Program-made: the position numbers and the translations under genes
Shown here: one piece after another, positions 2,223-60,876 of the stretch
Numbering within the stretch: position 1 is the first letter of the stretch
Layout: each line of letters opens with the position of its first letter
Assembly (NCBI RefSeq): GCF_006345805.1
Contig: NC_043003.1
Coordinates: forward strand, 65,596,001-65,660,000
DNA length: 64,000 nucleotides
Direction: 5' to 3'
From: Octopus sinensis
Taxonomy: Eukaryota
The notes under the pieces: model-generated
Told to the model about the DNA's origin: nothing
Database searches by the model: none
Seen by the model: the letters and a program-made list of their open reading frames with translations, nothing else

Positions 2223-2641
2223 TCACGCACGAACACATACACATACATTGGTTCACTGTTTGTTCTTATGCTTAGTAATACAATCCTAACCCAGAATTTT
2301 GCAGTAATGTGATGGGTTACCCTATATTTCTGTAGAATTCAAATTTATTACTCTTAGACAAGATTGTTATTGATAGTGATTTCGAAGTTTAGGCCAGTTG
2401 AACTATCGTCGGATGATGGCTTCACTGGCTGAGACTTCGAAATCACTGCCAATAATAATATTGCTTAAGAATAATACACACACACACACACACACATATA
2501 TATGGATGTGTGAGCTGTTGTGTGTATGTGTGTGTGTATGCTTCTATTTCTATGTGTCTTTATACGTATATATATATGTATATATGTGTAAAGTCGTGTA
2601 TATGTGTTTGAGTGTGCATTTGTGTGTATATATATGTATGC

Positions 2642-2710
<69 letters not shown>

Positions 2711-2732
2711 AGAAAGAGAGAGAGAGAGAGGC

Positions 2733-3286
2733 TGTATACTGTCAAATTAACGTGACAGTCCCGTATGAGAATTACACCACCGCTGTTTAGCCCTAGGAAG
2801 CATCGAACGCTTCCTGTCGGCTTTGACACATTTTCTGTGTCCTTATATTTGTGAAGGGGAGGCAAGCACCCCTACCAGCCAAGATCGCTTCACCACCGTT
2901 CATGTCTCTTTGAGACATTTAGAAATTTTATATTTTTGATTACGGTAACCAGTGAATAGATTTCACTGTAAATATATATATTTGTGAAGGCTGGACAGGC
3001 ACCTCAATCAGCAGATCTCACTGTCCTGGGCTGATGACGGGTTAAGACCCAGAAACATGCATGTGTGAATCTTAGCTGGTAGGGATGCTTGCCTCCCCTT
3101 CACAAATATAAGGACACAGAAAATGTGTCAAAGCCGACAGGAATCGTTCGATGCTTCCTAGGGCTAAACAGCCGTGGTGTAATTCCCATACGGAACTGTC
3201 ACGTTAAGTTGACAGTATACAACCACTCTATCGCTCCACCACCGCTCATGTCTCTTTGAAACATTTAGAAATTTTATATTTCTGAT
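2733..3286. repeat. Inverted duplication with direct repeat (A-B-X-A'-B)
   Basis: Arm A 2733-2885 is the reverse complement of 3069-3221 (~95% identity). B 2884-2940 is repeated directly at 3230-3286. Confidence 0.95.
3026..3065 (+). ncRNA. Degenerate minimal hammerhead ribozyme motif
   Basis: CTGATGA-C-GGGT-TAAG-ACCC-A-GAAA followed by the self-complementary ACATGCATGT. The triplet is GUG (non-cleavable) and the stem I 3' strand is missing. Confidence 0.5.
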
Positions 3287-3288
3287 AT

Positions 3289-3336
<48 letters not shown>

Positions 3337-16891: not shown

Positions 16892-17261
16892 TAGAAACAT
16901 TATTATTCCTAAATCTCGCAACGAGAGATATTTAGTAGCAGTTTTTTAAATTACCGATTATTTGTCAACCTAATGTGGCAGTCCCGTTTAGGACGAATGC
17001 TACTGTTGTTTAGCCGCATGAAACATCGTCTCCTGTAAGCTATACGACACGCGATCCGATCCGTGTTCTTATATTTTCGAACGGGAGGTGCTTGGCACCC
17101 CAGCCCAGCACAAAGCAGAGAGAGATATGGTATCTCCTGGGACTAAACAACAGATGCATTCGTCCCAAACGGGACTGCCACATTAGGTTGGCAAATAATC
17201 GTTACTTTAAAGTACTGCTACTAAATATCTCTCGTTGAGAGATTTAGGAACAATGTTTCTA
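16892..17261. mobile_element. MITE-like element with ~120-bp terminal inverted repeats
   Basis: 16892-17015 pairs with 17140-17261 (..CAACCTAATGTGGCAGTCCCGTTT.GGACGAATGC..). A fragment of the same arm occurs near 32530-32590. Confidence 0.85.
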
Positions 17262-22497: not shown

Positions 22498-23702
<1,205 letters not shown>

Positions 23703-28254: not shown

Positions 28255-28520
28255 ACGGGAAGGATCTTTAGAGCATTGAAATAAGGTTTCACGGCCCTTT
28301 TTGCCCTTCTTTGGATTTTAAGCTCAAATGCCTCCTATGTTGGCTTTGCCTTTATTCTTCTGGGGTTTGATAAAATGAAGTACCAGTCAAAATCCTGGGG
28401 TTGATTAAAATGAAGTACCAGTCAAAATCCTGAGGTTGATAAAATGAAGTACCAGTCAAACTCCTGGGCTTGATGTAATCGGTTACCAGGTCCCCGAAAA
28501 TCCAGGGCCTTGTGTTGTTC
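28255..28520 (+). mobile_element. Family-A SINE with an internal ~35-bp tandem triplication
   Basis: CTGGGGTTGATAAAATGAAGTACCAGTCAAAATC repeated ~3.3 times at 28360-28474 within a SINE body. Confidence 0.8.
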
Positions 28521-28852
28521 TTAGAAAGCTGTATTAAACCGTTAGGGGGGCATCGCGCTAATCGGCGCAACGGAGATTTGAAGAAAATACTTTGTTCCTG
28601 ACATTTTCCTTCTGAGTTCAAATGCCACCGATGTTATTCTTTTATTTCTTTCAGTTATTAGATTACGCCCATGCTAGGGCACTGCATTGAAGAATTTTTA
28701 GTCGAATGAATCGACGCCAGTTAAGTTACCATTCTTTAGAATGTCTATAAAACACTATACCAATCAAGTATTGGGTTGATAAAGTCTATTATTCGCTCCA
28801 CTCAAAATTTCTGACCTTGTGTCTAAATCGGAAACCTGTTATTAAAGAGACA

Positions 28853-28854
28853 TG

Positions 28855-28887
<33 letters not shown>

Positions 28888-29077
28888 GCTGCTGCTGCTT
28901 TTTTTTTGCGTATCCCTCAGTCAAGGAAATAGGCTTAGGAAGAGGAAGATTCCAAATGTGGCCACCCTGTTTCGTTATCGGTATTTAGAGAAGCATAATA
29001 TTCGATGTCCCTTTTCGTTGCTTGCTTGTTGTTTGATTTTATTTTTCATAGATTCAAAAGAGTTAGAGAGAGAGGGG

Positions 29078-29109
<32 letters not shown>

Positions 29110-30008
29110 AGGGCGCGAGGGAGATAGGTAGTGAGATCTAACTGTTATTTCTTGTGGTACGAAAAATAACGTCATAACCTTTCCTTCCACTTTGATCATT
29201 CAATCTTATTGAATGGTGAAGAATTGTACTTGACTGGTACTTTGAGACTTATCGCAGCTGTGGTAGTAACTGTAGCAGTCGAAGTGAAAATCTACTTCTT
29301 TTTCTGGTTTTCAATTTTTTTATTTTTTACCTAACGAGGTAGAATGATACTAAACTGTACTAAAGATTAAATTACGAAGGTGATAAGGGTGATATAGCTT
29401 TTACATTCTGAGACATAAACTTTCAAGCACAGTAAACTCATTCTCACGTACCATTTGCATCTTTTAATCTGGCTCCGTTTGGATGTAATGGAGAATTTAG
29501 CTAGTAGTTCTAGTCTGACGAGTAACTAAAGGTGGTTCGGTTTAGTGGTTTTTTGCCATTAACCGCAAAAAACCACTAAACCGAACCACCTTTAGTTACT
29601 CGTCAGACTAGAACTACTAGCTAAATTCTCCATTACATCCAAACGGAGCCAGATTAAAAGATGCAAATGGTACGTGAGAATGAGTTTACTGTGCTTGAAA
29701 GTTTATGTCTCAGAATGTAAAAGCTATATCACCCTTATCACATTCGTAATTTAATCTTTAGTACAGTTTGGTATCATTCTACCTCGTTAGGTAAAAAATA
29801 AAAAAATTGAAAACCAGAAAAAGAAGTAGATTTTCACTTCGACTGCTACAGTTACTACCACAGCTGCGATAAGTCTCAAAGTACCAGTCAAGTACAATTC
29901 TTCACCATTCAATAAGATTGAATGATCAAAGTGGAAGGAAAGGTTATGACGTTATTTTCGTCCTACAAGAAATAGCAGCTAGATCTCACTACCTATCTCC
30001 CTCGCGCC

Positions 30009-30048
<40 letters not shown>

Positions 30049-30250
30049 CCCCTCTTTCTCTAACTCTTTTGAATCTATGAAAAATAAAATCAAACAACAA
30101 GCAAGCAACGAAAAGAGACATCGAATATTGTTTCTCTAAATAAAGATAACGAAACAGGGTGGCCACATTTGGAATCTTTCTCTTCCTAAGCCAACTTCCT
30201 TGACTGAGGGTTACGCAAAAACAAAGCAGCAACAACAACAACAGCAATCA
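28853..30250. repeat. 1.4-kb near-perfect palindrome, 8-nt loop
   Basis: The left arm 28853-29556 is the reverse complement of 29565-30250; loop CATTAACC at 29557-29564. Confidence 0.98.
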
Positions 30251-30564
30251 TTGTTTGATTGCCGAAGGTGTAGTAGATGAAGTAGTATTTATGGTGATAT
30301 CTATAAAAGAACACTCGTGAGGTTAACTTCGGGTCAGCCCTAAACGTAGCACAACTATGTTCAGAGACCGCATATATTCCAGCTACGTCCATGCTGTCTT
30401 ATGTTAGTCACAGCATATGTAAGTTCACTGAAGTTTCTTCTTCGTAGACCAATTAATCTACTCAAAGAAATGGATTGCTATCTCTAAGCAATCGAGCGTT
30501 AGATTAGAGTTCTTCCGTGTCTGTGTGGTGGGTCTCTATTTTCAGTAATCTCTCTCCTCGTACT

Positions 30565-30830
30565 TTTAAAGCCTAGCCAGGCTCATGGGCCCGGTTTCCC
30601 GGTTTCAATGGCGTATGTGTTTCCCGGTTTCAATGGCGTATGTGTTTCCCAGCTGGATGGGACGCCATTCCATCGCAGCGTTACTCATTTTTTTCCAGCT
30701 GAGTGCACTGGAGAAACGTGAAATGAAGTGTTTTGCTCAAGAACACAACGCATCGCCCGGTCCAGGAATCGAAACAACAATCTTACGATCATAATGCTGA
30801 CAACCTAACCACTAAGCCACGCGCCTCCAC
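30565..30830 (-). mobile_element. tRNA-derived SINE family D with a 25-bp internal tandem duplication
   Basis: Minus head GTGGAGGCGCGTGGCTTAGTGGTTAGG..GTTTCGATTCC. GTTTCCCGGTTTCAATGGCGTATGT is duplicated at 30594-30643. Confidence 0.85.
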
Positions 30831-33344: not shown

Positions 33345-33950
<606 letters not shown>

Positions 33951-34199
33951 CATGCTGATTGTAATTTTTGGTTTAGGCAGTGTTTGTTGTTGTTTTGATC
34001 CATATCAGCCTTGATCCATATCATCCTTGAACGAACAAACCTATGATGAAACGATGCCATAGCATAGCCGCATTCTTTGGTCTGAAACATATGTACGAAA
34101 GGCGAGTTACAACCGTGGCCATCCTGTTTGTTTTTAATTTTGATTGTCTAGCTATTGCCGAACCCTGAAAACAATATTCAATGTAAACTTCTTTTATGA

Positions 34200-36795: not shown

Positions 36796-37199
36796 TATGC
36801 TGGATTGTAATATTGGTTGTGATGGTGATGCAGTTGATAGCCATTATGATGGTGTTGTTAGTAAGGGATGCGGGAGGCGATGATTGCTTGCTAGCTGACT
36901 GGCTGGCTGGCTTGGTGGATGGTAATGTGACAATGGTGTTCCTGGCTGTGCTGAGCTGATGCCAGCTGCCGATGAGTCATACAGTTTTCCCCAGTTTTTA
37001 ATGTCTTACCTCTTCCACCATCGACAACACACAAAACACCCAACGCCCTCATACGCACACACACACACACACACACACACACCTATCTTCTCACACACAC
37101 ACACACGGACACACATATACACGCCCTCATTCACGCATATATTTCTCAAGCACATCGCGCTAAACTCGTCCTTCCATTTCAGGTCGCTTCATAGAATTT

Positions 37200-37223
37200 C
37201 ATCAACATCAGCAACATCAGCAA

Positions 37224-37254
<31 letters not shown>

Positions 37255-37547
37255 GTCGTCATCGTCGTCGTTGTTATTGTCGCTATCGCCATCTTCCCCT
37301 CCGTCGCTGCCACCATCACTGCCACTAAAACCAAAACCACCACCGCCCCCACCACTACCACCACCACCACCACCACACTACCCATTACTACCATGGCTAC
37401 TACCACCAACATTATTACCATCACCACCACCATATCATCATCAGCATCATCACCACCACCACCACCACCACCACCACCACCACCATCACCTCCATCATCA
37501 TCTCCATCATCATCTCCATCATCATCATCATCATCATCATCATTATT

Positions 37548-37587
<40 letters not shown>

Positions 37588-37589
37588 CT

Positions 37590-37635
<46 letters not shown>

Positions 37636-37830
37636 CATCATCATCATCATCATCATCACCATCATCACCATCATCATCGTCGTCGTCTTCGTCGTCGTCA
37701 TCATTTTCAATATTATCACCTTATCGTCACCAACAGCATTATTATCCAATTTCAGCTTATATTGTCTCCAAGATTCCGATTCCTTTTGCCCCATTGTTAA
37801 GAAGCTTGTTGATATTGTTGTTGTTGCTAA

Positions 37831-37884
<54 letters not shown>

Positions 37885-37920
37885 TGTATTTGTTGCCCTC
37901 CTTCTGGCTGTTATAATAGT
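37200..37920. repeat. Long compound triplet microsatellite (CAT)n/(CAC)n/(CGT)n/(ATT)n
   Basis: Directly visible; it accounts for the 332-aa poly-His/Ser/Ile ORF. Confidence 0.95.
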
Positions 37921-38889
37921 TATTTTCTTTTATTTCTTTTTCTTTTACTTGTTATAGCTTTATTTTGGCTTCTTTCTCCTTCTCTCCTTCTCTCCCCCCT
38001 CTACCTCTCTCCTTCCATATTTCCTCCAGTGATTTCGTTCCTTGCACATATATATCCCCCCACCACTTCTCAAATCCCTACCAAGCCCTCTTCCAGCCAT
38101 CACTGTCTTCTTCGACTCCATAGCCCAGTCCTTTTTAGAAACCACTTGCTCGCCTCAAGACGAAGGCTGCCTGTAGAAGAATGTCACATTTCTTAGCTTC
38201 TGTAACCTTCCTAACCTCACCTCATTCGCCCCACCGAACCCTTTAAATCTTCTTCCCATTACTTCTGTTCGCCCGTCCCTCACCCAATCCTTCTTGTATT
38301 GCATTCCATCGCATTACATTACACCGCTTTGCTTTCCTTTCCATTGCTTTGCTTTACATTGTATTGAATGGCAGGCACCATCTTATCCAGAAACACACCC
38401 CAACCAGCCTAACAAACCTCCGCTGTCTCTACCAAACATTCCATTAGACTGCCGTGATAAGCAACCTAACATCTGAGACGTAAAATGCAATTGGTTATTA
38501 ACGAGAAGAGAAAATGTCACGTGAATGTCTAGAAGATGGAAATTGATGCTGGTAGAAAACGGAAATGCTAGTGTTGGTTCTTGGTGTTGAGGGTGTTAGT
38601 AGCAATGTTGATTACAGTGGTTGTATTAACGATTTGGTTTATCCCCATAATTCAACTCTTAAGCAAGGCGTTCCACCACTGCCTATCCTGTCTTTTTGTA
38701 TTTAGTGTTCCTAGGAAATTATACTGGAAAAATAAAACGAAGCAATGCAAAAAACGGAAGTATTAGCGCTGGTTATCTTTGCTATTAAAGTTATGCAAGG
38801 CGTTCCATCTCTGCCTATCTCTACTTTCATTTACTGTTCCTACAAAATTATACTGACATAAAACGAAAGTGCTGCCGCTGGTTATTAGT

Positions 38890-44435: not shown

Positions 44436-44780
44436 GTGGAACTCGAAGCAATCGAACAAAGTCGGGAAAGATATGCCGTGCTACACATCTAGAAAATCTT
44501 AGAAGTCCTTGTACCAAACTTTGACATTGAGAGACCTACAAAGTGTGGATGTAGGTGTCTTCAAAACAAAACTGGATTTCCTGCTGTTAAGGGTTCCAGA
44601 TGAGCCCCCTTCACAGAAGGAAATACAGATGAGGGCAGCAGAATCAACCTTTCTCATTCACCAAATGCCACATATCAGAGGATGTTTCAAACAATGGTGT
44701 AGCACAATCAACGGCGGTGCACCAGCATGAACGCAGCTTTGAAGCTGAAACAATTTAAAGGTTTAAAGAGATCAAAGATT
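44436..44780 (+). mobile_element. CR1-like LINE 3' fragment
   Basis: EQSRERYAVLHI*KILEVLVPNF and LRDLQSVDVGVFKTKLDFLLLRVPDEP..RAAES match the CR1 ORF2 C-terminus. Confidence 0.75.
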
Positions 44781-44834
44781 TATATATATATATATATCCC
44801 TCTCTCCTCCTCCTTCTCTCCCTCTTCCTCTGTC

Positions 44835-45126
44835 TCTCAACCATTGTTGGAACGTTTAGTAGATATGAGGGATGGGTTACTGGCCCGTCAAAAGTGTATG
44901 GTCCAACAACATGACGCTCATTAAGTGCTGCCCACATAATGGAATGCGGAGTGTTGTATTCAGTTTTTATATAATGAAGATTCTCTTTTACCCAGAAGTA
45001 AATATTTCTTGCCCGACTCGAACAGTAATCTGTGCACTCGTAGGTTAACATCACTTTTCCTCGAGAAGGAATCGTATTGAATAACATAATAACGTATGGA
45101 CGGGTAGGGACTTACGGGCCTCCCTG
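44835..45126 (-). mobile_element. Tc3-like transposase fragment with one TIR
   Basis: VMLTYEC..RARNIYFWVKENLHY..PHSIMWAALNERHVVGPYTFDGPVTHPSYL. End CAGGGAGGCCCGTAAGTCCC with TA at 45127-28. Confidence 0.75.
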
Positions 45127-55594: not shown

Positions 55595-55634
<40 letters not shown>

Positions 55635-55659
55635 TGTAAGTCAATATTTATTATATATA

Positions 55660-56030
55660 CAGGGTGATTCAAAAGTCTCCAAATATAGGAAAAATTTATA
55701 TTTTTATAAGAAATAGTTTATAGTATCCTCTAGATTCCCTGATCTGACCCCTCTTGATCTCTATCATTGGGGACATTTGAAAGGCATGGTGTATCGCGGA
55801 AAGATAAAAGACATAAATCGTTTGAAGGAACGCATCACCAACTCATTTGCACATGTATCACCAGATGTGCTATTATAAGTTTACAATGAGTGGGGTAAAC
55901 GTATTGCAATGCGTATTCAAAACAATGGTAACCATATAGAGCCTTTTAAATAAAAAAGAAAACTGTACATATAAACTGTTTCTTATAAAACGATAAATTT
56001 CTCCTATTTATGGCGACTTTTGAATCACCT

Positions 56031-56032
<2 letters not shown>
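55660..56032 (+). mobile_element. Tc3-like deletion derivative
   Basis: TIRs CAGGGTGATTCAAAAGTCTCCA / TGGCGACTTTTGAATCACCTTG. Internal SPDLTPLDLYHWGHLKGMVYR..LKERIT..NNGNHIE. Confidence 0.9.
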
Positions 56033-56075
<43 letters not shown>

Positions 56076-60321: not shown

Positions 60322-60876
60322 TAACTGAAACAAGCTCTTCATCTGCGTAAAACGATGTTCTGCGTATGGTGGGACCGGGAAGGGATTATCCTTTACGAAT
60401 TGCTTGAACGGAACGAAACGGTCAACGCGAACTTTATGTTCAACAGATATAATGACTCAACATAGCTATTCAAGAGAAAAGTCCTAATCGGCAGCATGGA
60501 GTTCTTCTGTTGCATGACGACGCCCGCCCTCATGTCGCCAATACGACCAAAGAAGCCATTCAAACGCATGGCTGGGAAGTGCTGCCACACCCGCCCGTAC
60601 TCTCCTGATTGGGCACCAACGGATTTCCACCTCTTTCGATCTCTTTCAAATGCTATGTGCGGAGTTTCGTTCAATACTGATGCAGAATTGAGAGGTTGGT
60701 TGGATCAATTTTCTGAGTCGAAACCGGGTGATTTCTACCAACGAGATATTGAAAATCTTGTTGAACGTTGGGAAGAAGTTGTAAACAAGATTATTGATTA
60801 ATTAGTTGTTATTTTTATTAAACCTTTTAAAAAAATTAAATCTTAAAAAACGGCGGGAACTTAGTTGTCAACCCAA
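60322..60876 (+). mobile_element. mariner (Mos1/Hsmar-type) transposase 3' half with the right TIR
   Basis: KTMFCVWWDREGII.YELL, LLLHDDARPH, YSPDWAPTDFHLFRSL..GIENLV-like ending. TIR AAAAACGGCGGGAACTTAGTTGTCAACCCAA. Confidence 0.92.

What the first reader, a model, noticed from the sequence alone, without database searches (positions are those of the whole stretch)
28853..30250. 1.4-kb palindrome with an abrupt step in arm identity (inner 99.5%, outer ~95%)
Seen: ~700-bp arms around an 8-nt loop. Manual alignment shows only 2 substitutions over 29166-29556 versus 29565-29955. The outer ~310 bp carry about 14 substitutions, several indels and different microsatellite lengths, starting sharply at ~29165/29957. 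There is no TSD or transposase. Established: such palindromes are normally unstable (cruciform, SbcCD/Mre11-type cleavage), and coleoid cephalopods edit dsRNA extensively via ADAR. Inference: an old palindrome whose core is being homogenised by arm-to-arm conversion or selection for a long hairpin RNA (endo-siRNA or ADAR substrate).
Basis: partly seen in the sequence, partly recalled or inferred. Interest (0 to 1): 0.75.

Follow-up and report, generated by a model that had tools for sequence, protein, structure and literature searches.

The report
Single-copy 1.4-kb palindrome, mosaic arms
A 1.4-kb stretch of non-coding octopus DNA reads almost the same forwards and backwards, is found only once in the genome, and has arms that are nearly identical near the centre but diverged at the edges, which most likely reflects one arm repeatedly copying the other and not any known gene, transposon or RNA function.

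Summary
Window 28852-30251 is a 1400-bp palindrome with arms of 705 and 687 bp. It is symmetric about 29560/29561, and only two mismatched pairs lie at the centre.

The core (29163-29556 against 29565-29958) differs at 2 of 394 sites. The outer arms differ at 15 of 286 sites and carry 4 indels. The step is significant (change-point at 29159, permutation p = 0.0004). However, the outer part is itself a mosaic: a 130-bp patch is as clean as the core.

The arms occur nowhere else in the 2.72-Gb genome, which matches the published figures for the Octopus sinensis PacBio/Hi-C assembly. No target-site duplication, ORF with a family match, tRNA or Rfam family was found. Two other hairpin-shaped repeats in the same genome belong to high-copy families; this one does not.

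A simple fold-back read artefact fits poorly. The flanks are unrelated, no gap lies within 28 kb, no adapter sits at the centre, and the arms differ mainly by substitutions.

Best reading: an old local inverted duplication whose arms were later re-templated on each other. An endo-siRNA role is disfavoured, because there is no second homologous locus and molluscs appear to lack that pathway. ADAR editing would be incidental and is untested. Independent reads and sister-species loci could not be reached.

The parts
28852..29556 (.). Left arm of the palindrome (705 bp)
   Evidence: Gapped alignment to the reverse complement of 29565-30251; the repeat finder I1-I4
29557..29564 (.). Centre: CATTAACC. 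Symmetry axis lies between 29560 and 29561. TTAA is self-complementary, and 29558/29563 and 29557/29564 are the only mismatched pairs, so there is effectively no spacer
   Evidence: Sequence read directly; alignment
29565..30251 (.). Right arm of the palindrome (687 bp)
29163..29556 (.). Near-identical core, left half (partner 29565-29958): 2 substitutions in 394 sites, with perfect duplex runs of 188 and 177 bp
29141..29162 (.). Mismatch island at the core boundary (partner 29959-29979): 4 substitutions and a 1-nt indel in 22 bp
29011..29140 (.). Second clean block (partner 29980-30115): 1 substitution in 130 sites plus a 6-nt (GA)n length difference
28852..29010 (.). Outermost diverged block (partner 30116-30251): 10 substitutions in 135 aligned sites (7.4%), a 21-nt (TTG)n/(CTG)n length difference and a 2-nt indel. 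Read from the centre outward, each arm ends in A-run-(CAG)n-(CAA)n-TCAT
28723..28851 (.). Unique left flank abutting the palindrome; unrelated to the right flank
   Evidence: only the dispersed repeat at 28638-28722 has other genomic hits; no homology beyond 28852
30252..30562 (.). Unique right flank; a TGATTG motif (the terminal motif of the left arm) lies 5 nt outside the arm end at 30256-30261

Best explanation
This is a genuine, single-locus, non-coding inverted duplication, and it is not a mobile element.

A ~700-bp piece of unique sequence was duplicated head-to-head with essentially no spacer. The likely route was a fold-back or strand-switch event during replication or break repair, and the only candidate priming homology at the centre is the GC dinucleotide on either side of CATTAACC. 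This step is inferred.

The two arms then diverged to about 7-8%, a level still visible in the outermost 160 bp. Later, one arm was used as template for the other at least once, either by intrachromosomal gene conversion or by intrastrand (quasi-palindrome) template switching. That reset the inner ~550 bp to near-identity and left a mosaic of clean blocks (29163-29556 and 29011-29140) and unconverted remnants (29141-29162 and 28852-29010).

A centre-high, edge-low pattern is what conversion predicts for a spacer-less palindrome. Homology with the partner runs straight through the centre but stops at the outer ends, so tracts rarely reach the edges. The dense mismatch island would also block hairpin or heteroduplex extension.

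The DNA itself has no demonstrated function. If transcribed it would form a ~700-bp duplex and be edited by ADAR as a by-product.
For: Shown:
- The palindrome and its step are real (change-point permutation p = 0.0004).
- The outer arm is mosaic: block 29011-29140 is as clean as the core (p = 0.58) and cleaner than the rest of the outer arm (p = 0.002).
- The arms match only each other in the 2.72-Gb genome, even at E <= 10, and match nothing else in the window apart from (GA)n.
- The flanks are unique and unrelated to each other.
- There is no TSD, and no tRNA or Rfam family. The arm ORFs were not found by exact look-up and the one searched for homologues found none.
- Arm differences are mostly substitutions (17, against 4 indels; ts:tv 10:7), none at CpG by inspection. 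This is not the indel-dominated residue expected of raw PacBio error.
- No N lies within 28 kb and no SMRTbell adapter sits at the centre.

Precedent for arm-to-arm conversion maintaining inverted repeats: primate sex-chromosome palindromes and C. elegans long inverted repeats (PMC3723533, PMC8327919 and PMC1803023, listed).
Against: - There is no independent sequence. No reads, second haplotype or sister species could be reached, so neither the reality of the locus nor the direction or timing of conversion is shown.
- A single conversion tract cannot explain a 22-bp diverged island lying between two clean blocks. Two tracts, or patchy mismatch repair, must be assumed.
- The core is not GC-enriched (0.348 against 0.412 for the outer arm), so there is no trace of GC-biased conversion.
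- Long spacer-less palindromes are expected to be fragile (PMC7999016), which makes survival for millions of years surprising.
- With only 17 substitutions, the position of the step is soft. A break at 29011 fits nearly as well as one at 29159 (hand calculation from the counts).
Confidence: 0.5

Rival explanations
1. Two ages by construction. An older inverted repeat (the outer ~310-bp arms) originally flanked a unique spacer. During replication the nascent strand copied ~394 bp into the spacer and folded back on itself at a GC microhomology. It then copied its own strand back out and re-joined the original template through the homology of the old arms. This would create a brand-new perfect inner palindrome, delete the rest of the spacer, and put the identity step exactly at the old arm boundary.
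For: - The step at 29159-29163 is abrupt and coincides with a dense mismatch island that could be the inner edge of an older repeat.
- The centre has only a 2-nt GC homology around an 8-nt asymmetric core, as expected for fold-back priming.
- Template switching at quasi-palindromes is an established mechanism (discussed in PMC7999016; PMC3855049 listed).
Against: - It does not explain why 29011-29140, outside the supposed new part, is as clean as the core.
- It needs a pre-existing inverted repeat of unique sequence, which itself needs an origin.
- No outgroup is available to show a former spacer.
Confidence: 0.2
2. Assembly artefact. A fold-back or chimeric PacBio read, or a mis-join of two haplotypes in opposite orientation, produced a palindrome that does not exist in the animal. 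The arm differences would then be haplotype differences or polishing noise.
For: - The genome's figures (13,516 scaffolds, 2719.2 Mb) match the O. sinensis assembly GCA_006345805.1 as tabulated in PMC10700109. From my own recall, not verified here because the assembly paper is not held, it was built from noisy continuous PacBio long reads plus Hi-C. It shows 5.2% duplicated BUSCOs.
- Fold-back reads are a documented artefact class (PMC12870357).
Against: - A fold-back read mirrors everything beyond the fold, so the left and right flanks should be reverse complements. They are unrelated and each is unique.
- The arms are only ~700 bp, and the locus is at least 28 kb from any gap.
- No adapter remnant sits at the centre (best local score 7 of 45).
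- The arms differ by 17 substitutions arranged in blocks, not by random indels.
- No alternative haplotig of the arms or flanks exists in the assembly.
- The three PacBio data sets examined in PMC12870357 showed virtually no fold-back reads.
Confidence: 0.12
3. Functional hairpin-RNA gene. The locus is transcribed, and selection for a long perfect duplex (as an endo-siRNA precursor or a dedicated ADAR substrate or sponge) keeps the core arms complementary.
For: - Either strand would fold into a single ~700-bp hairpin (MFE -1193.5 kcal/mol for the + strand), with perfect runs of 188 and 177 bp.
- Octopus ADAR editing concentrates on hairpins in non-coding RNA (PMC9699675).
Against: - No other genomic sequence is homologous to the arms, so there is no trans target.
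- Molluscs, including an octopus, show no dedicated siRNA machinery or Dicer-pair signal (PMC12479628).
- No Rfam family reaches its gathering score.
- Arm differences show no significant strand-specific G:U bias (7 against 3).
- Selection on pairing alone would allow compensatory change and would not require identity.
- Transcription is untested.
Confidence: 0.05
4. A foldback-type transposon or MITE, or two head-to-head copies of a retroposon, now decayed.
For: - Hairpin-shaped repeats are common in this genome. Window 2625-3332 and L060:159-1081 are inverted pairs belonging to families with thousands and more than a thousand first-look candidates.
- Read outward, each arm ends in an A-run followed by a (CAG)n(CAA)n tail that resembles a retroposon 3' tail.
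Against: - The arms have no other copy in 2.72 Gb, even at E <= 10.
- There is no TSD.
- There is no coding capacity or family match.
Confidence: 0.03
5. No conversion at all. The arms are of one age, and the outer part simply mutates faster (microsatellites, local context), or the pattern is chance.
For: - The outer arm contains (TTG)n, (GA)n and T/A runs, which account for the length differences.
- There are only 17 substitutions in total.
Against: - The permutation test rejects uniformity (p = 0.0004).
- Most of the substitutions do not lie in the microsatellites, and by inspection none is at a CpG.
- The (GA)n-containing block 29011-29140 is one of the cleanest segments.
Confidence: 0.05

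Closest known systems
Arm-to-arm gene-converting palindromes (primate Y P1-P8, primate and mouse X palindromes) and long near-perfect inverted repeats of C. elegans
   Same: Inverted duplicates of non-repetitive sequence whose arms stay far more alike than their age allows, which is attributed to intrachromosomal gene conversion (PMC3723533, PMC8327919, PMC1803023).
   Different: Those are 8 kb to over 1 Mb, have spacers of kilobases, carry genes, and show >99.9% identity along the whole arm. This one is 1.4 kb, has no spacer or gene, and is only partly homogenised. Conversion has not been demonstrated here by cross-species co-variation.
Human PATRRs (palindromic AT-rich repeats on 11q23, 22q11, 17q11, 8q24)
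   Same: Unique-sequence, near-perfect, essentially spacer-less palindromes of several hundred bp in non-coding or intronic DNA. They share no homology with one another and are expected to extrude cruciforms (PMC7999016).
   Different: PATRRs are >90% AT; this palindrome is 62% AT, close to the 63% AT average of this 64-kb window. PATRRs are defined by recurrent translocation breakpoints, which cannot be assessed here. This palindrome is two to three times longer.
Quasi-palindrome correction by intrastrand template switching (Ripley model; studied in E. coli and yeast)
   Same: It predicts that an imperfect palindrome is made perfect over a discrete tract with sharp ends, as seen for the core.
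   Different: Documented tracts are tens of bases in short quasi-palindromes. A tract of about 400 bp in a metazoan germline is an extrapolation.
Drosophila hpRNA loci and young plant MIRNA genes born by inverted duplication
   Same: A long, near-perfect inverted duplication capable of forming a hairpin RNA.
   Different: Those derive from, and target, a homologous gene elsewhere in the genome. Here no homologous locus exists, and the siRNA pathway appears to be absent from molluscs.
Foldback elements / MITEs with long TIRs
   Same: Hairpin-shaped DNA. Examples occur in the same genome (window 2625-3332).
   Different: Those are multi-copy with recurring inverted-pair architecture. The focal arms are single-locus and lack a TSD.

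Membership tests
Foldback transposon / MITE | Multiple dispersed copies in the genome | tested here: not met
   Only the two arms match, at E <= 0.001 and at E <= 10, in 2.72 Gb. The control families at window 2625-2885 and L060:159-597 returned 84 and 118 scored hits.
Foldback transposon / MITE | Target-site duplication flanking the terminal inverted repeats | tested here: not met
   No direct repeat of 6 nt or more abuts both ends.
Fold-back read / assembly artefact | Mirror symmetry continues into the flanks, or the palindrome sits at a contig end or gap | tested here: not met
   Homology stops at 28852 and 30251 and the flanks are unrelated. There is no N anywhere in the 64-kb window.
Fold-back read / assembly artefact | Adapter remnant at the fold point | tested here: not met
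   The best local alignment of the SMRTbell adapter to 29500-29620 scores 7 of 45.
Fold-back read / assembly artefact | Absence of raw reads spanning both arms and both flanks | not testable with these tools
   No read data are available. Look-ups that might have reached independent assemblies found nothing.
hpRNA / endo-siRNA locus | Long inverted repeat able to form a hairpin | tested here: met
   It folds as a single hairpin with MFE -1193.5 kcal/mol and perfect runs of 188 and 177 bp.
hpRNA / endo-siRNA locus | Homologous trans target elsewhere in the genome | tested here: not met
   No other match in G000.
hpRNA / endo-siRNA locus | Transcription and 21-23-nt Dicer products | not testable with these tools
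   No expression data are available. The literature reports no dedicated siRNA pathway in molluscs (PMC12479628).
Rfam miRNA families (mir-548, MIR6425, MIR476) | Score at or above the family gathering threshold | tested here: not met
   The scores are 62-69 bits against thresholds of 80-142. They are symmetric on both strands and centred on the fold point, so they are generic perfect-hairpin matches.
PATRR-type palindrome | Near-perfect palindrome of hundreds of bp without a spacer | tested here: met
PATRR-type palindrome | >90% A+T | tested here: not met
   G+C is 0.376 for the whole palindrome and 0.348 for the core.
Gene-converting palindrome (sex-chromosome type) | Arm identity far above that expected from age, shown by within-species co-variation of arms across species | not testable with these tools
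   No orthologous sequences could be reached. Only the internal contrast is available: core 0.5% against outermost 7.4% divergence.
Gene-converting palindrome (sex-chromosome type) | Large arms (>8 kb) with a spacer and arm-borne genes | tested here: not met
   The arms are 705 and 687 bp, with no spacer. The arm ORFs (30 aa or longer) gave no exact match, and the one searched for homologues gave none.

The most novel reading that the evidence does not exclude
The octopus germline tolerates, and actively re-homogenises from the centre outward, a spacer-less 1.4-kb palindrome of unique sequence over millions of years. That would imply hairpin- or cruciform-templated repair operating on a structure that is rapidly destroyed in bacteria, yeast and mammals. 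It could possibly be coupled to transcription that feeds the unusually active coleoid ADAR system.
Probability: 0.1. Interest if true: 0.6.

Novelty: new member of a known kind. Interest (0 to 1): 0.3.

Why it matters
If the locus is real, it is a natural long palindrome of ordinary base composition in a metazoan germline. Its built-in age contrast (0.5% against 7.4% arm divergence) would allow palindrome survival, conversion-tract length and edge effects to be measured in a lineage where none of this is known.

It would also be a predicted fragile site and a predicted ADAR substrate. As it stands, it is one unverified locus in a long-read assembly, with no gene, no RNA evidence and no comparative support. 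Its present value is that of a curiosity and a test case for read-level validation.

Tried and rejected
1. Transposon origin. The genome-wide copy number of the core, the outer arm and the whole arm gave only self-hits. Rejected.

2. Empty-site or paralogous-flank approach. The flanks next to the palindrome are unique, and the only repeats lie 130 bp and 310 bp away. No empty site is available.

3. Known RNA families and tRNA. Nothing reaches threshold.

4. Reaching independent assemblies through spurious ORFs of the arms. Exact look-up of 10 ORFs failed, although the TTG-start ORFs were submitted as L-initial translations, which may have prevented an exact match. One word-based homologue search also found nothing.

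5. Exact 32-33-mers of the centre and of the core against metagenome contigs gave no matches.

I substituted a scan of 242 kb already held.

7. Coding context. The ten longest non-low-complexity ORFs of the window gave no Pfam hit, so the gene or intron context remains unknown.

8. SMRTbell adapter at the centre or ends. None was found; the (TTG)n and (GA)n similarity is only microsatellite.

9. CpG decay as the cause of the outer divergence. None of the transitions is in a CpG context (inspection).

10. Snap-back retro-copy origin, suggested by the A-run-(CAG)n(CAA)n tails. Rejected because there is no TSD and no parent copy.

11. The original assembly paper is not in the library. One literature search timed out.

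Full report
**What is there**

Window 28852-30251 is a 1400-bp palindrome. A gapped global alignment of the left arm (28852-29556, 705 bp) with the reverse complement of the right arm (29565-30251, 687 bp) shows homology starting sharply at ATGATTG / CAATCAT. There is no similarity beyond that on either side.

The '8-nt loop' CATTAACC (29557-29564) is better described as no spacer at all. The axis of symmetry lies between 29560 and 29561. The central TTAA is self-complementary, and only the pairs 29558/29563 and 29557/29564 are mismatched.

**The step in arm identity**

The core (29163-29556 against 29565-29958) has 2 substitutions in 394 sites. The outer arm has 15 substitutions in 286 ungapped columns, plus four indels:
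- 21 nt in the (TTG)n/(CTG)n tract
- 2 nt at 28993-28994
- 6 nt in (GA)n
- 1 nt in an A-run at 29162

Fisher's exact test gives p = 1.8e-4. A maximum-likelihood single change-point falls at 29159, and only 0.04% of permutations reach its likelihood ratio.

The outer arm is not uniformly '~95%', however:
- 28852-29010 is 7.4% diverged.
- 29011-29140 has 1 difference in 130 sites. It is indistinguishable from the core (p = 0.58) and cleaner than the rest of the outer arm (p = 0.002).
- 29141-29162 is a dense island of 4 substitutions and 1 indel in 22 bp.

The real pattern is a mosaic of two clean blocks, a small island between them, and a diverged outer rim. With only 17 substitutions, the exact position of 'the' step is soft. 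From the counts, a break at 29011 fits almost as well as one at 29159.

**Where the window comes from**

The genome holding the window has 2,719,151,902 bp in 13,516 sequences. These figures equal those tabulated for the chromosome-scale Octopus sinensis assembly GCA_006345805.1 (13,516 scaffolds, 2719.2 Mb, 5.2% duplicated BUSCOs) in PMC10700109. From my own recall, not verified here because the assembly paper is not held, that assembly was built from noisy continuous PacBio long reads (not HiFi), short-read polishing and Hi-C. This bears on the artefact question below.

**It is not a mobile element or a known RNA**

The core, the outer arm and the whole arm each match only the two arms themselves in the entire genome, even at E <= 10. 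Within the window the arm matches nothing but (GA)n tracts.

The sequence next to the palindrome is unique for 130 bp on the left and 310 bp on the right. Dispersed repeats begin only at 28638-28722 and 30563-30625. No direct repeat of 6 nt or more abuts both ends.

There is no tRNA, and no Rfam family reaches its gathering score. A permissive scan returns only sub-threshold miRNA-precursor models (mir-548, MIR6425, MIR476). These match both strands symmetrically at the fold point, so they are generic perfect-hairpin matches.

The ORFs in the arms are short and low in complexity. None was found by exact look-up in the protein collection, and the one searched for homologues found none. The ten longest non-trivial ORFs of the whole window have no Pfam match, so the neighbourhood is repeat-rich non-coding DNA. 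Whether it lies in an intron could not be determined.

**Contrast with other hairpin-shaped DNA in the same genome**

I scanned 242 kb already in hand (the window plus 58 three-kb loci from elsewhere in the genome) for inverted self-matches. Two examples stand out:
- The inverted pair at window 2625-2885 / 3069-3332 belongs to a family with about 2,800 first-look candidates, and its copies recur as inverted pairs at many loci. This is a foldback/MITE-like element.
- A 920-bp palindrome at L060:159-1081 sits inside a (TA)n tract. Its arms belong to a very young family with more than 1,000 candidates at 93-100% identity, which also forms ~485-bp tandem arrays.

Palindromic repeats are therefore common in this genome, but they are multi-copy. 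The focal palindrome is the only long one found whose arms are single-locus.

**Is it an assembly artefact?**

Fold-back reads are a documented long-read artefact in which the second half of a read is the reverse complement of the first (PMC12870357). Several features argue against that here:
- The palindrome stops after ~700 bp, and the two flanks are unrelated unique sequences. A fold-back would mirror the flank as well.
- There is no gap anywhere in the 64-kb window, so this is not a contig end.
- There is no adapter remnant at the centre.
- The arms differ by 17 substitutions arranged in blocks (ts:tv 10:7). That is unlike the indel-dominated errors of raw PacBio data, and it is incompatible with two strands of a single molecule.
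- No alternative haplotig of the arms or flanks exists in the assembly.

A more contrived artefact (a chimeric read combined with a structural heterozygote) cannot be excluded without reads. I put the artefact at about 12%.

**Most likely history (inferred)**

A ~700-bp unique segment was duplicated head-to-head by a fold-back or strand-switch event. The only candidate priming homology at the centre is the GC dinucleotide on each side of CATTAACC.

The arms then diverged. The Jukes-Cantor distance of the outermost block is 0.078, against 0.005 for the core. That is a roughly 15-fold age contrast. With an assumed rate of 1-5e-9 per site per year, it corresponds very roughly to 8-39 My against 0.5-2.5 My.

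Afterwards one arm was copied from the other at least once, and probably twice, by intrachromosomal gene conversion or by intrastrand quasi-palindrome template switching.

A spacer-less palindrome is homologous to its own reverse complement straight through the centre, but that homology ends at the outer boundaries. Conversion tracts should therefore cover the centre easily and the rim rarely, which is the polarity observed. The 22-bp mismatch island would act as a barrier to hairpin, cruciform or heteroduplex extension, which would sharpen the step.

Arm-to-arm conversion is well documented in much larger palindromes and in C. elegans inverted repeats (PMC3723533, PMC8327919 and PMC1803023).

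**Main biological rival**

The outer arms may be an older inverted repeat that once flanked a unique spacer, with the core being a younger nested fold-back duplication that replaced that spacer. This places the step at the old arm boundary by construction. It does not explain the clean 29011-29140 block. One outgroup sequence would separate the two models.

**RNA function**

Either strand would fold into one hairpin (MFE -1193.5 kcal/mol for the + strand), with perfect duplex runs of 188 and 177 bp. Any transcript would therefore be an excellent ADAR substrate. In octopus most A-to-I editing does fall in intronic and 3'UTR hairpins (PMC9699675). That makes editing a likely by-product of transcription, not a reason for the structure.

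The endo-siRNA idea is disfavoured for three reasons:
- There is no homologous target anywhere else in the genome.
- A survey of 32 molluscs that included O. bimaculoides found neither siRNA-class Argonaute or Dicer proteins nor Dicer-pair signatures (PMC12479628).
- The arm differences show no significant excess of G:U-compatible changes on either strand: 7 on the + strand, 3 on the - strand, and 7 mismatched on both.

The core is also not GC-enriched relative to the outer arm (0.348 against 0.412).

**Comparison with known kinds**

In behaviour, the locus resembles a miniature gene-converting palindrome. In anatomy, it resembles a human PATRR: a unique, near-perfect, spacer-less palindrome of hundreds of bp in non-coding DNA (PMC7999016).

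It fails the defining >90% AT criterion for PATRRs (62% AT). It also lacks the size, spacer and genes of sex-chromosome palindromes. It is not a foldback transposon (copy number and TSD criteria not met) and not an hpRNA locus (no target).

I file it as a new member of a known kind, namely long inverted duplications with partial arm homogenisation.

**Limits**

The following remain open:
- whether the palindrome is real
- its age
- the direction of copying
- whether it is transcribed

The decisive data are the raw reads, the O. vulgaris and O. bimaculoides orthologous loci, and RNA and small-RNA maps. All are public, but none could be reached with these tools.

Noticed in passing
L060:159-1182 (G000:C1:153658859-153659882): A second long palindrome: arms of ~430 bp that are 100% identical in their outer parts, a spacer of about 56 nt, and a third partial copy of the centre at 1082-1182, all inserted inside a (TA)n microsatellite. 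Its arm belongs to a very young high-copy family (more than 1000 first-look candidates; 118 scored hits at 93-100% identity). That family also forms head-to-tail arrays with a ~485-bp period (e.g. G000:C10:102789415-102796562) and inverted pairs. It may be a satellite-like or rolling-circle (Helitron-like) element. It is unrelated in sequence to the focal palindrome.
   Followed up: partly
window 2625-2885 and 3069-3332: An inverted pair (~85% identity, 183-nt spacer) from a multi-copy family (about 2800 first-look candidates). Its copies recur as closely spaced inverted pairs at many loci (e.g. C8:60109568/60109915, C2:128929804/128930085, C10:7125475/7125683). This is a foldback/MITE-like element with ~260-bp terminal inverted repeats.
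   Followed up: partly
window 16902-17032 / 17124-17254 and 55615-55725 / 55966-56071: Further short-spacer inverted pairs (86-91% and 80% identity). They are probably also repeat-derived, but this was not examined.
   Followed up: no
window 30555-30650 and L060:1323-1565: The right-hand neighbour of the palindrome is the 3' end of a tRNA-like SINE in minus orientation. The intact copy in L060 shows sequence that looks like tRNA-type A and B boxes. In the window, its terminal 25-mer GTTTCCCGGTTTCAATGGCGTATGT is tandemly duplicated (30594-30643). The family has hundreds of copies at 96-100% identity over the 63-bp core.
   Followed up: partly
window 28360-28474: A 35-bp tandem repeat of 3.3 copies (CTGGGGTTGATAAAATGAAGTACCAGTCAAAATC). 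It lies ~165 bp upstream of a dispersed ~85-bp repeat at 28638-28722, which has more than 1000 genomic candidates.
   Followed up: no
window 36926-37957 and 33440-34147: Stop-free low-complexity tracts of 708 bp and 1032 bp built from trinucleotide microsatellites. They give poly-H/S/P/I/D 'ORFs' of 235-343 aa in several frames. These are not genes but could mislead ORF-based annotation.
   Followed up: no
window 60393-60801, 44755-45111, 23177-23470: To the eye, these ORF fragments resemble decayed mariner/Tc1-type transposase (e.g. ...YSPDWAPTDFHLFRSL...). None reached E <= 0.01 against Pfam.
   Followed up: partly
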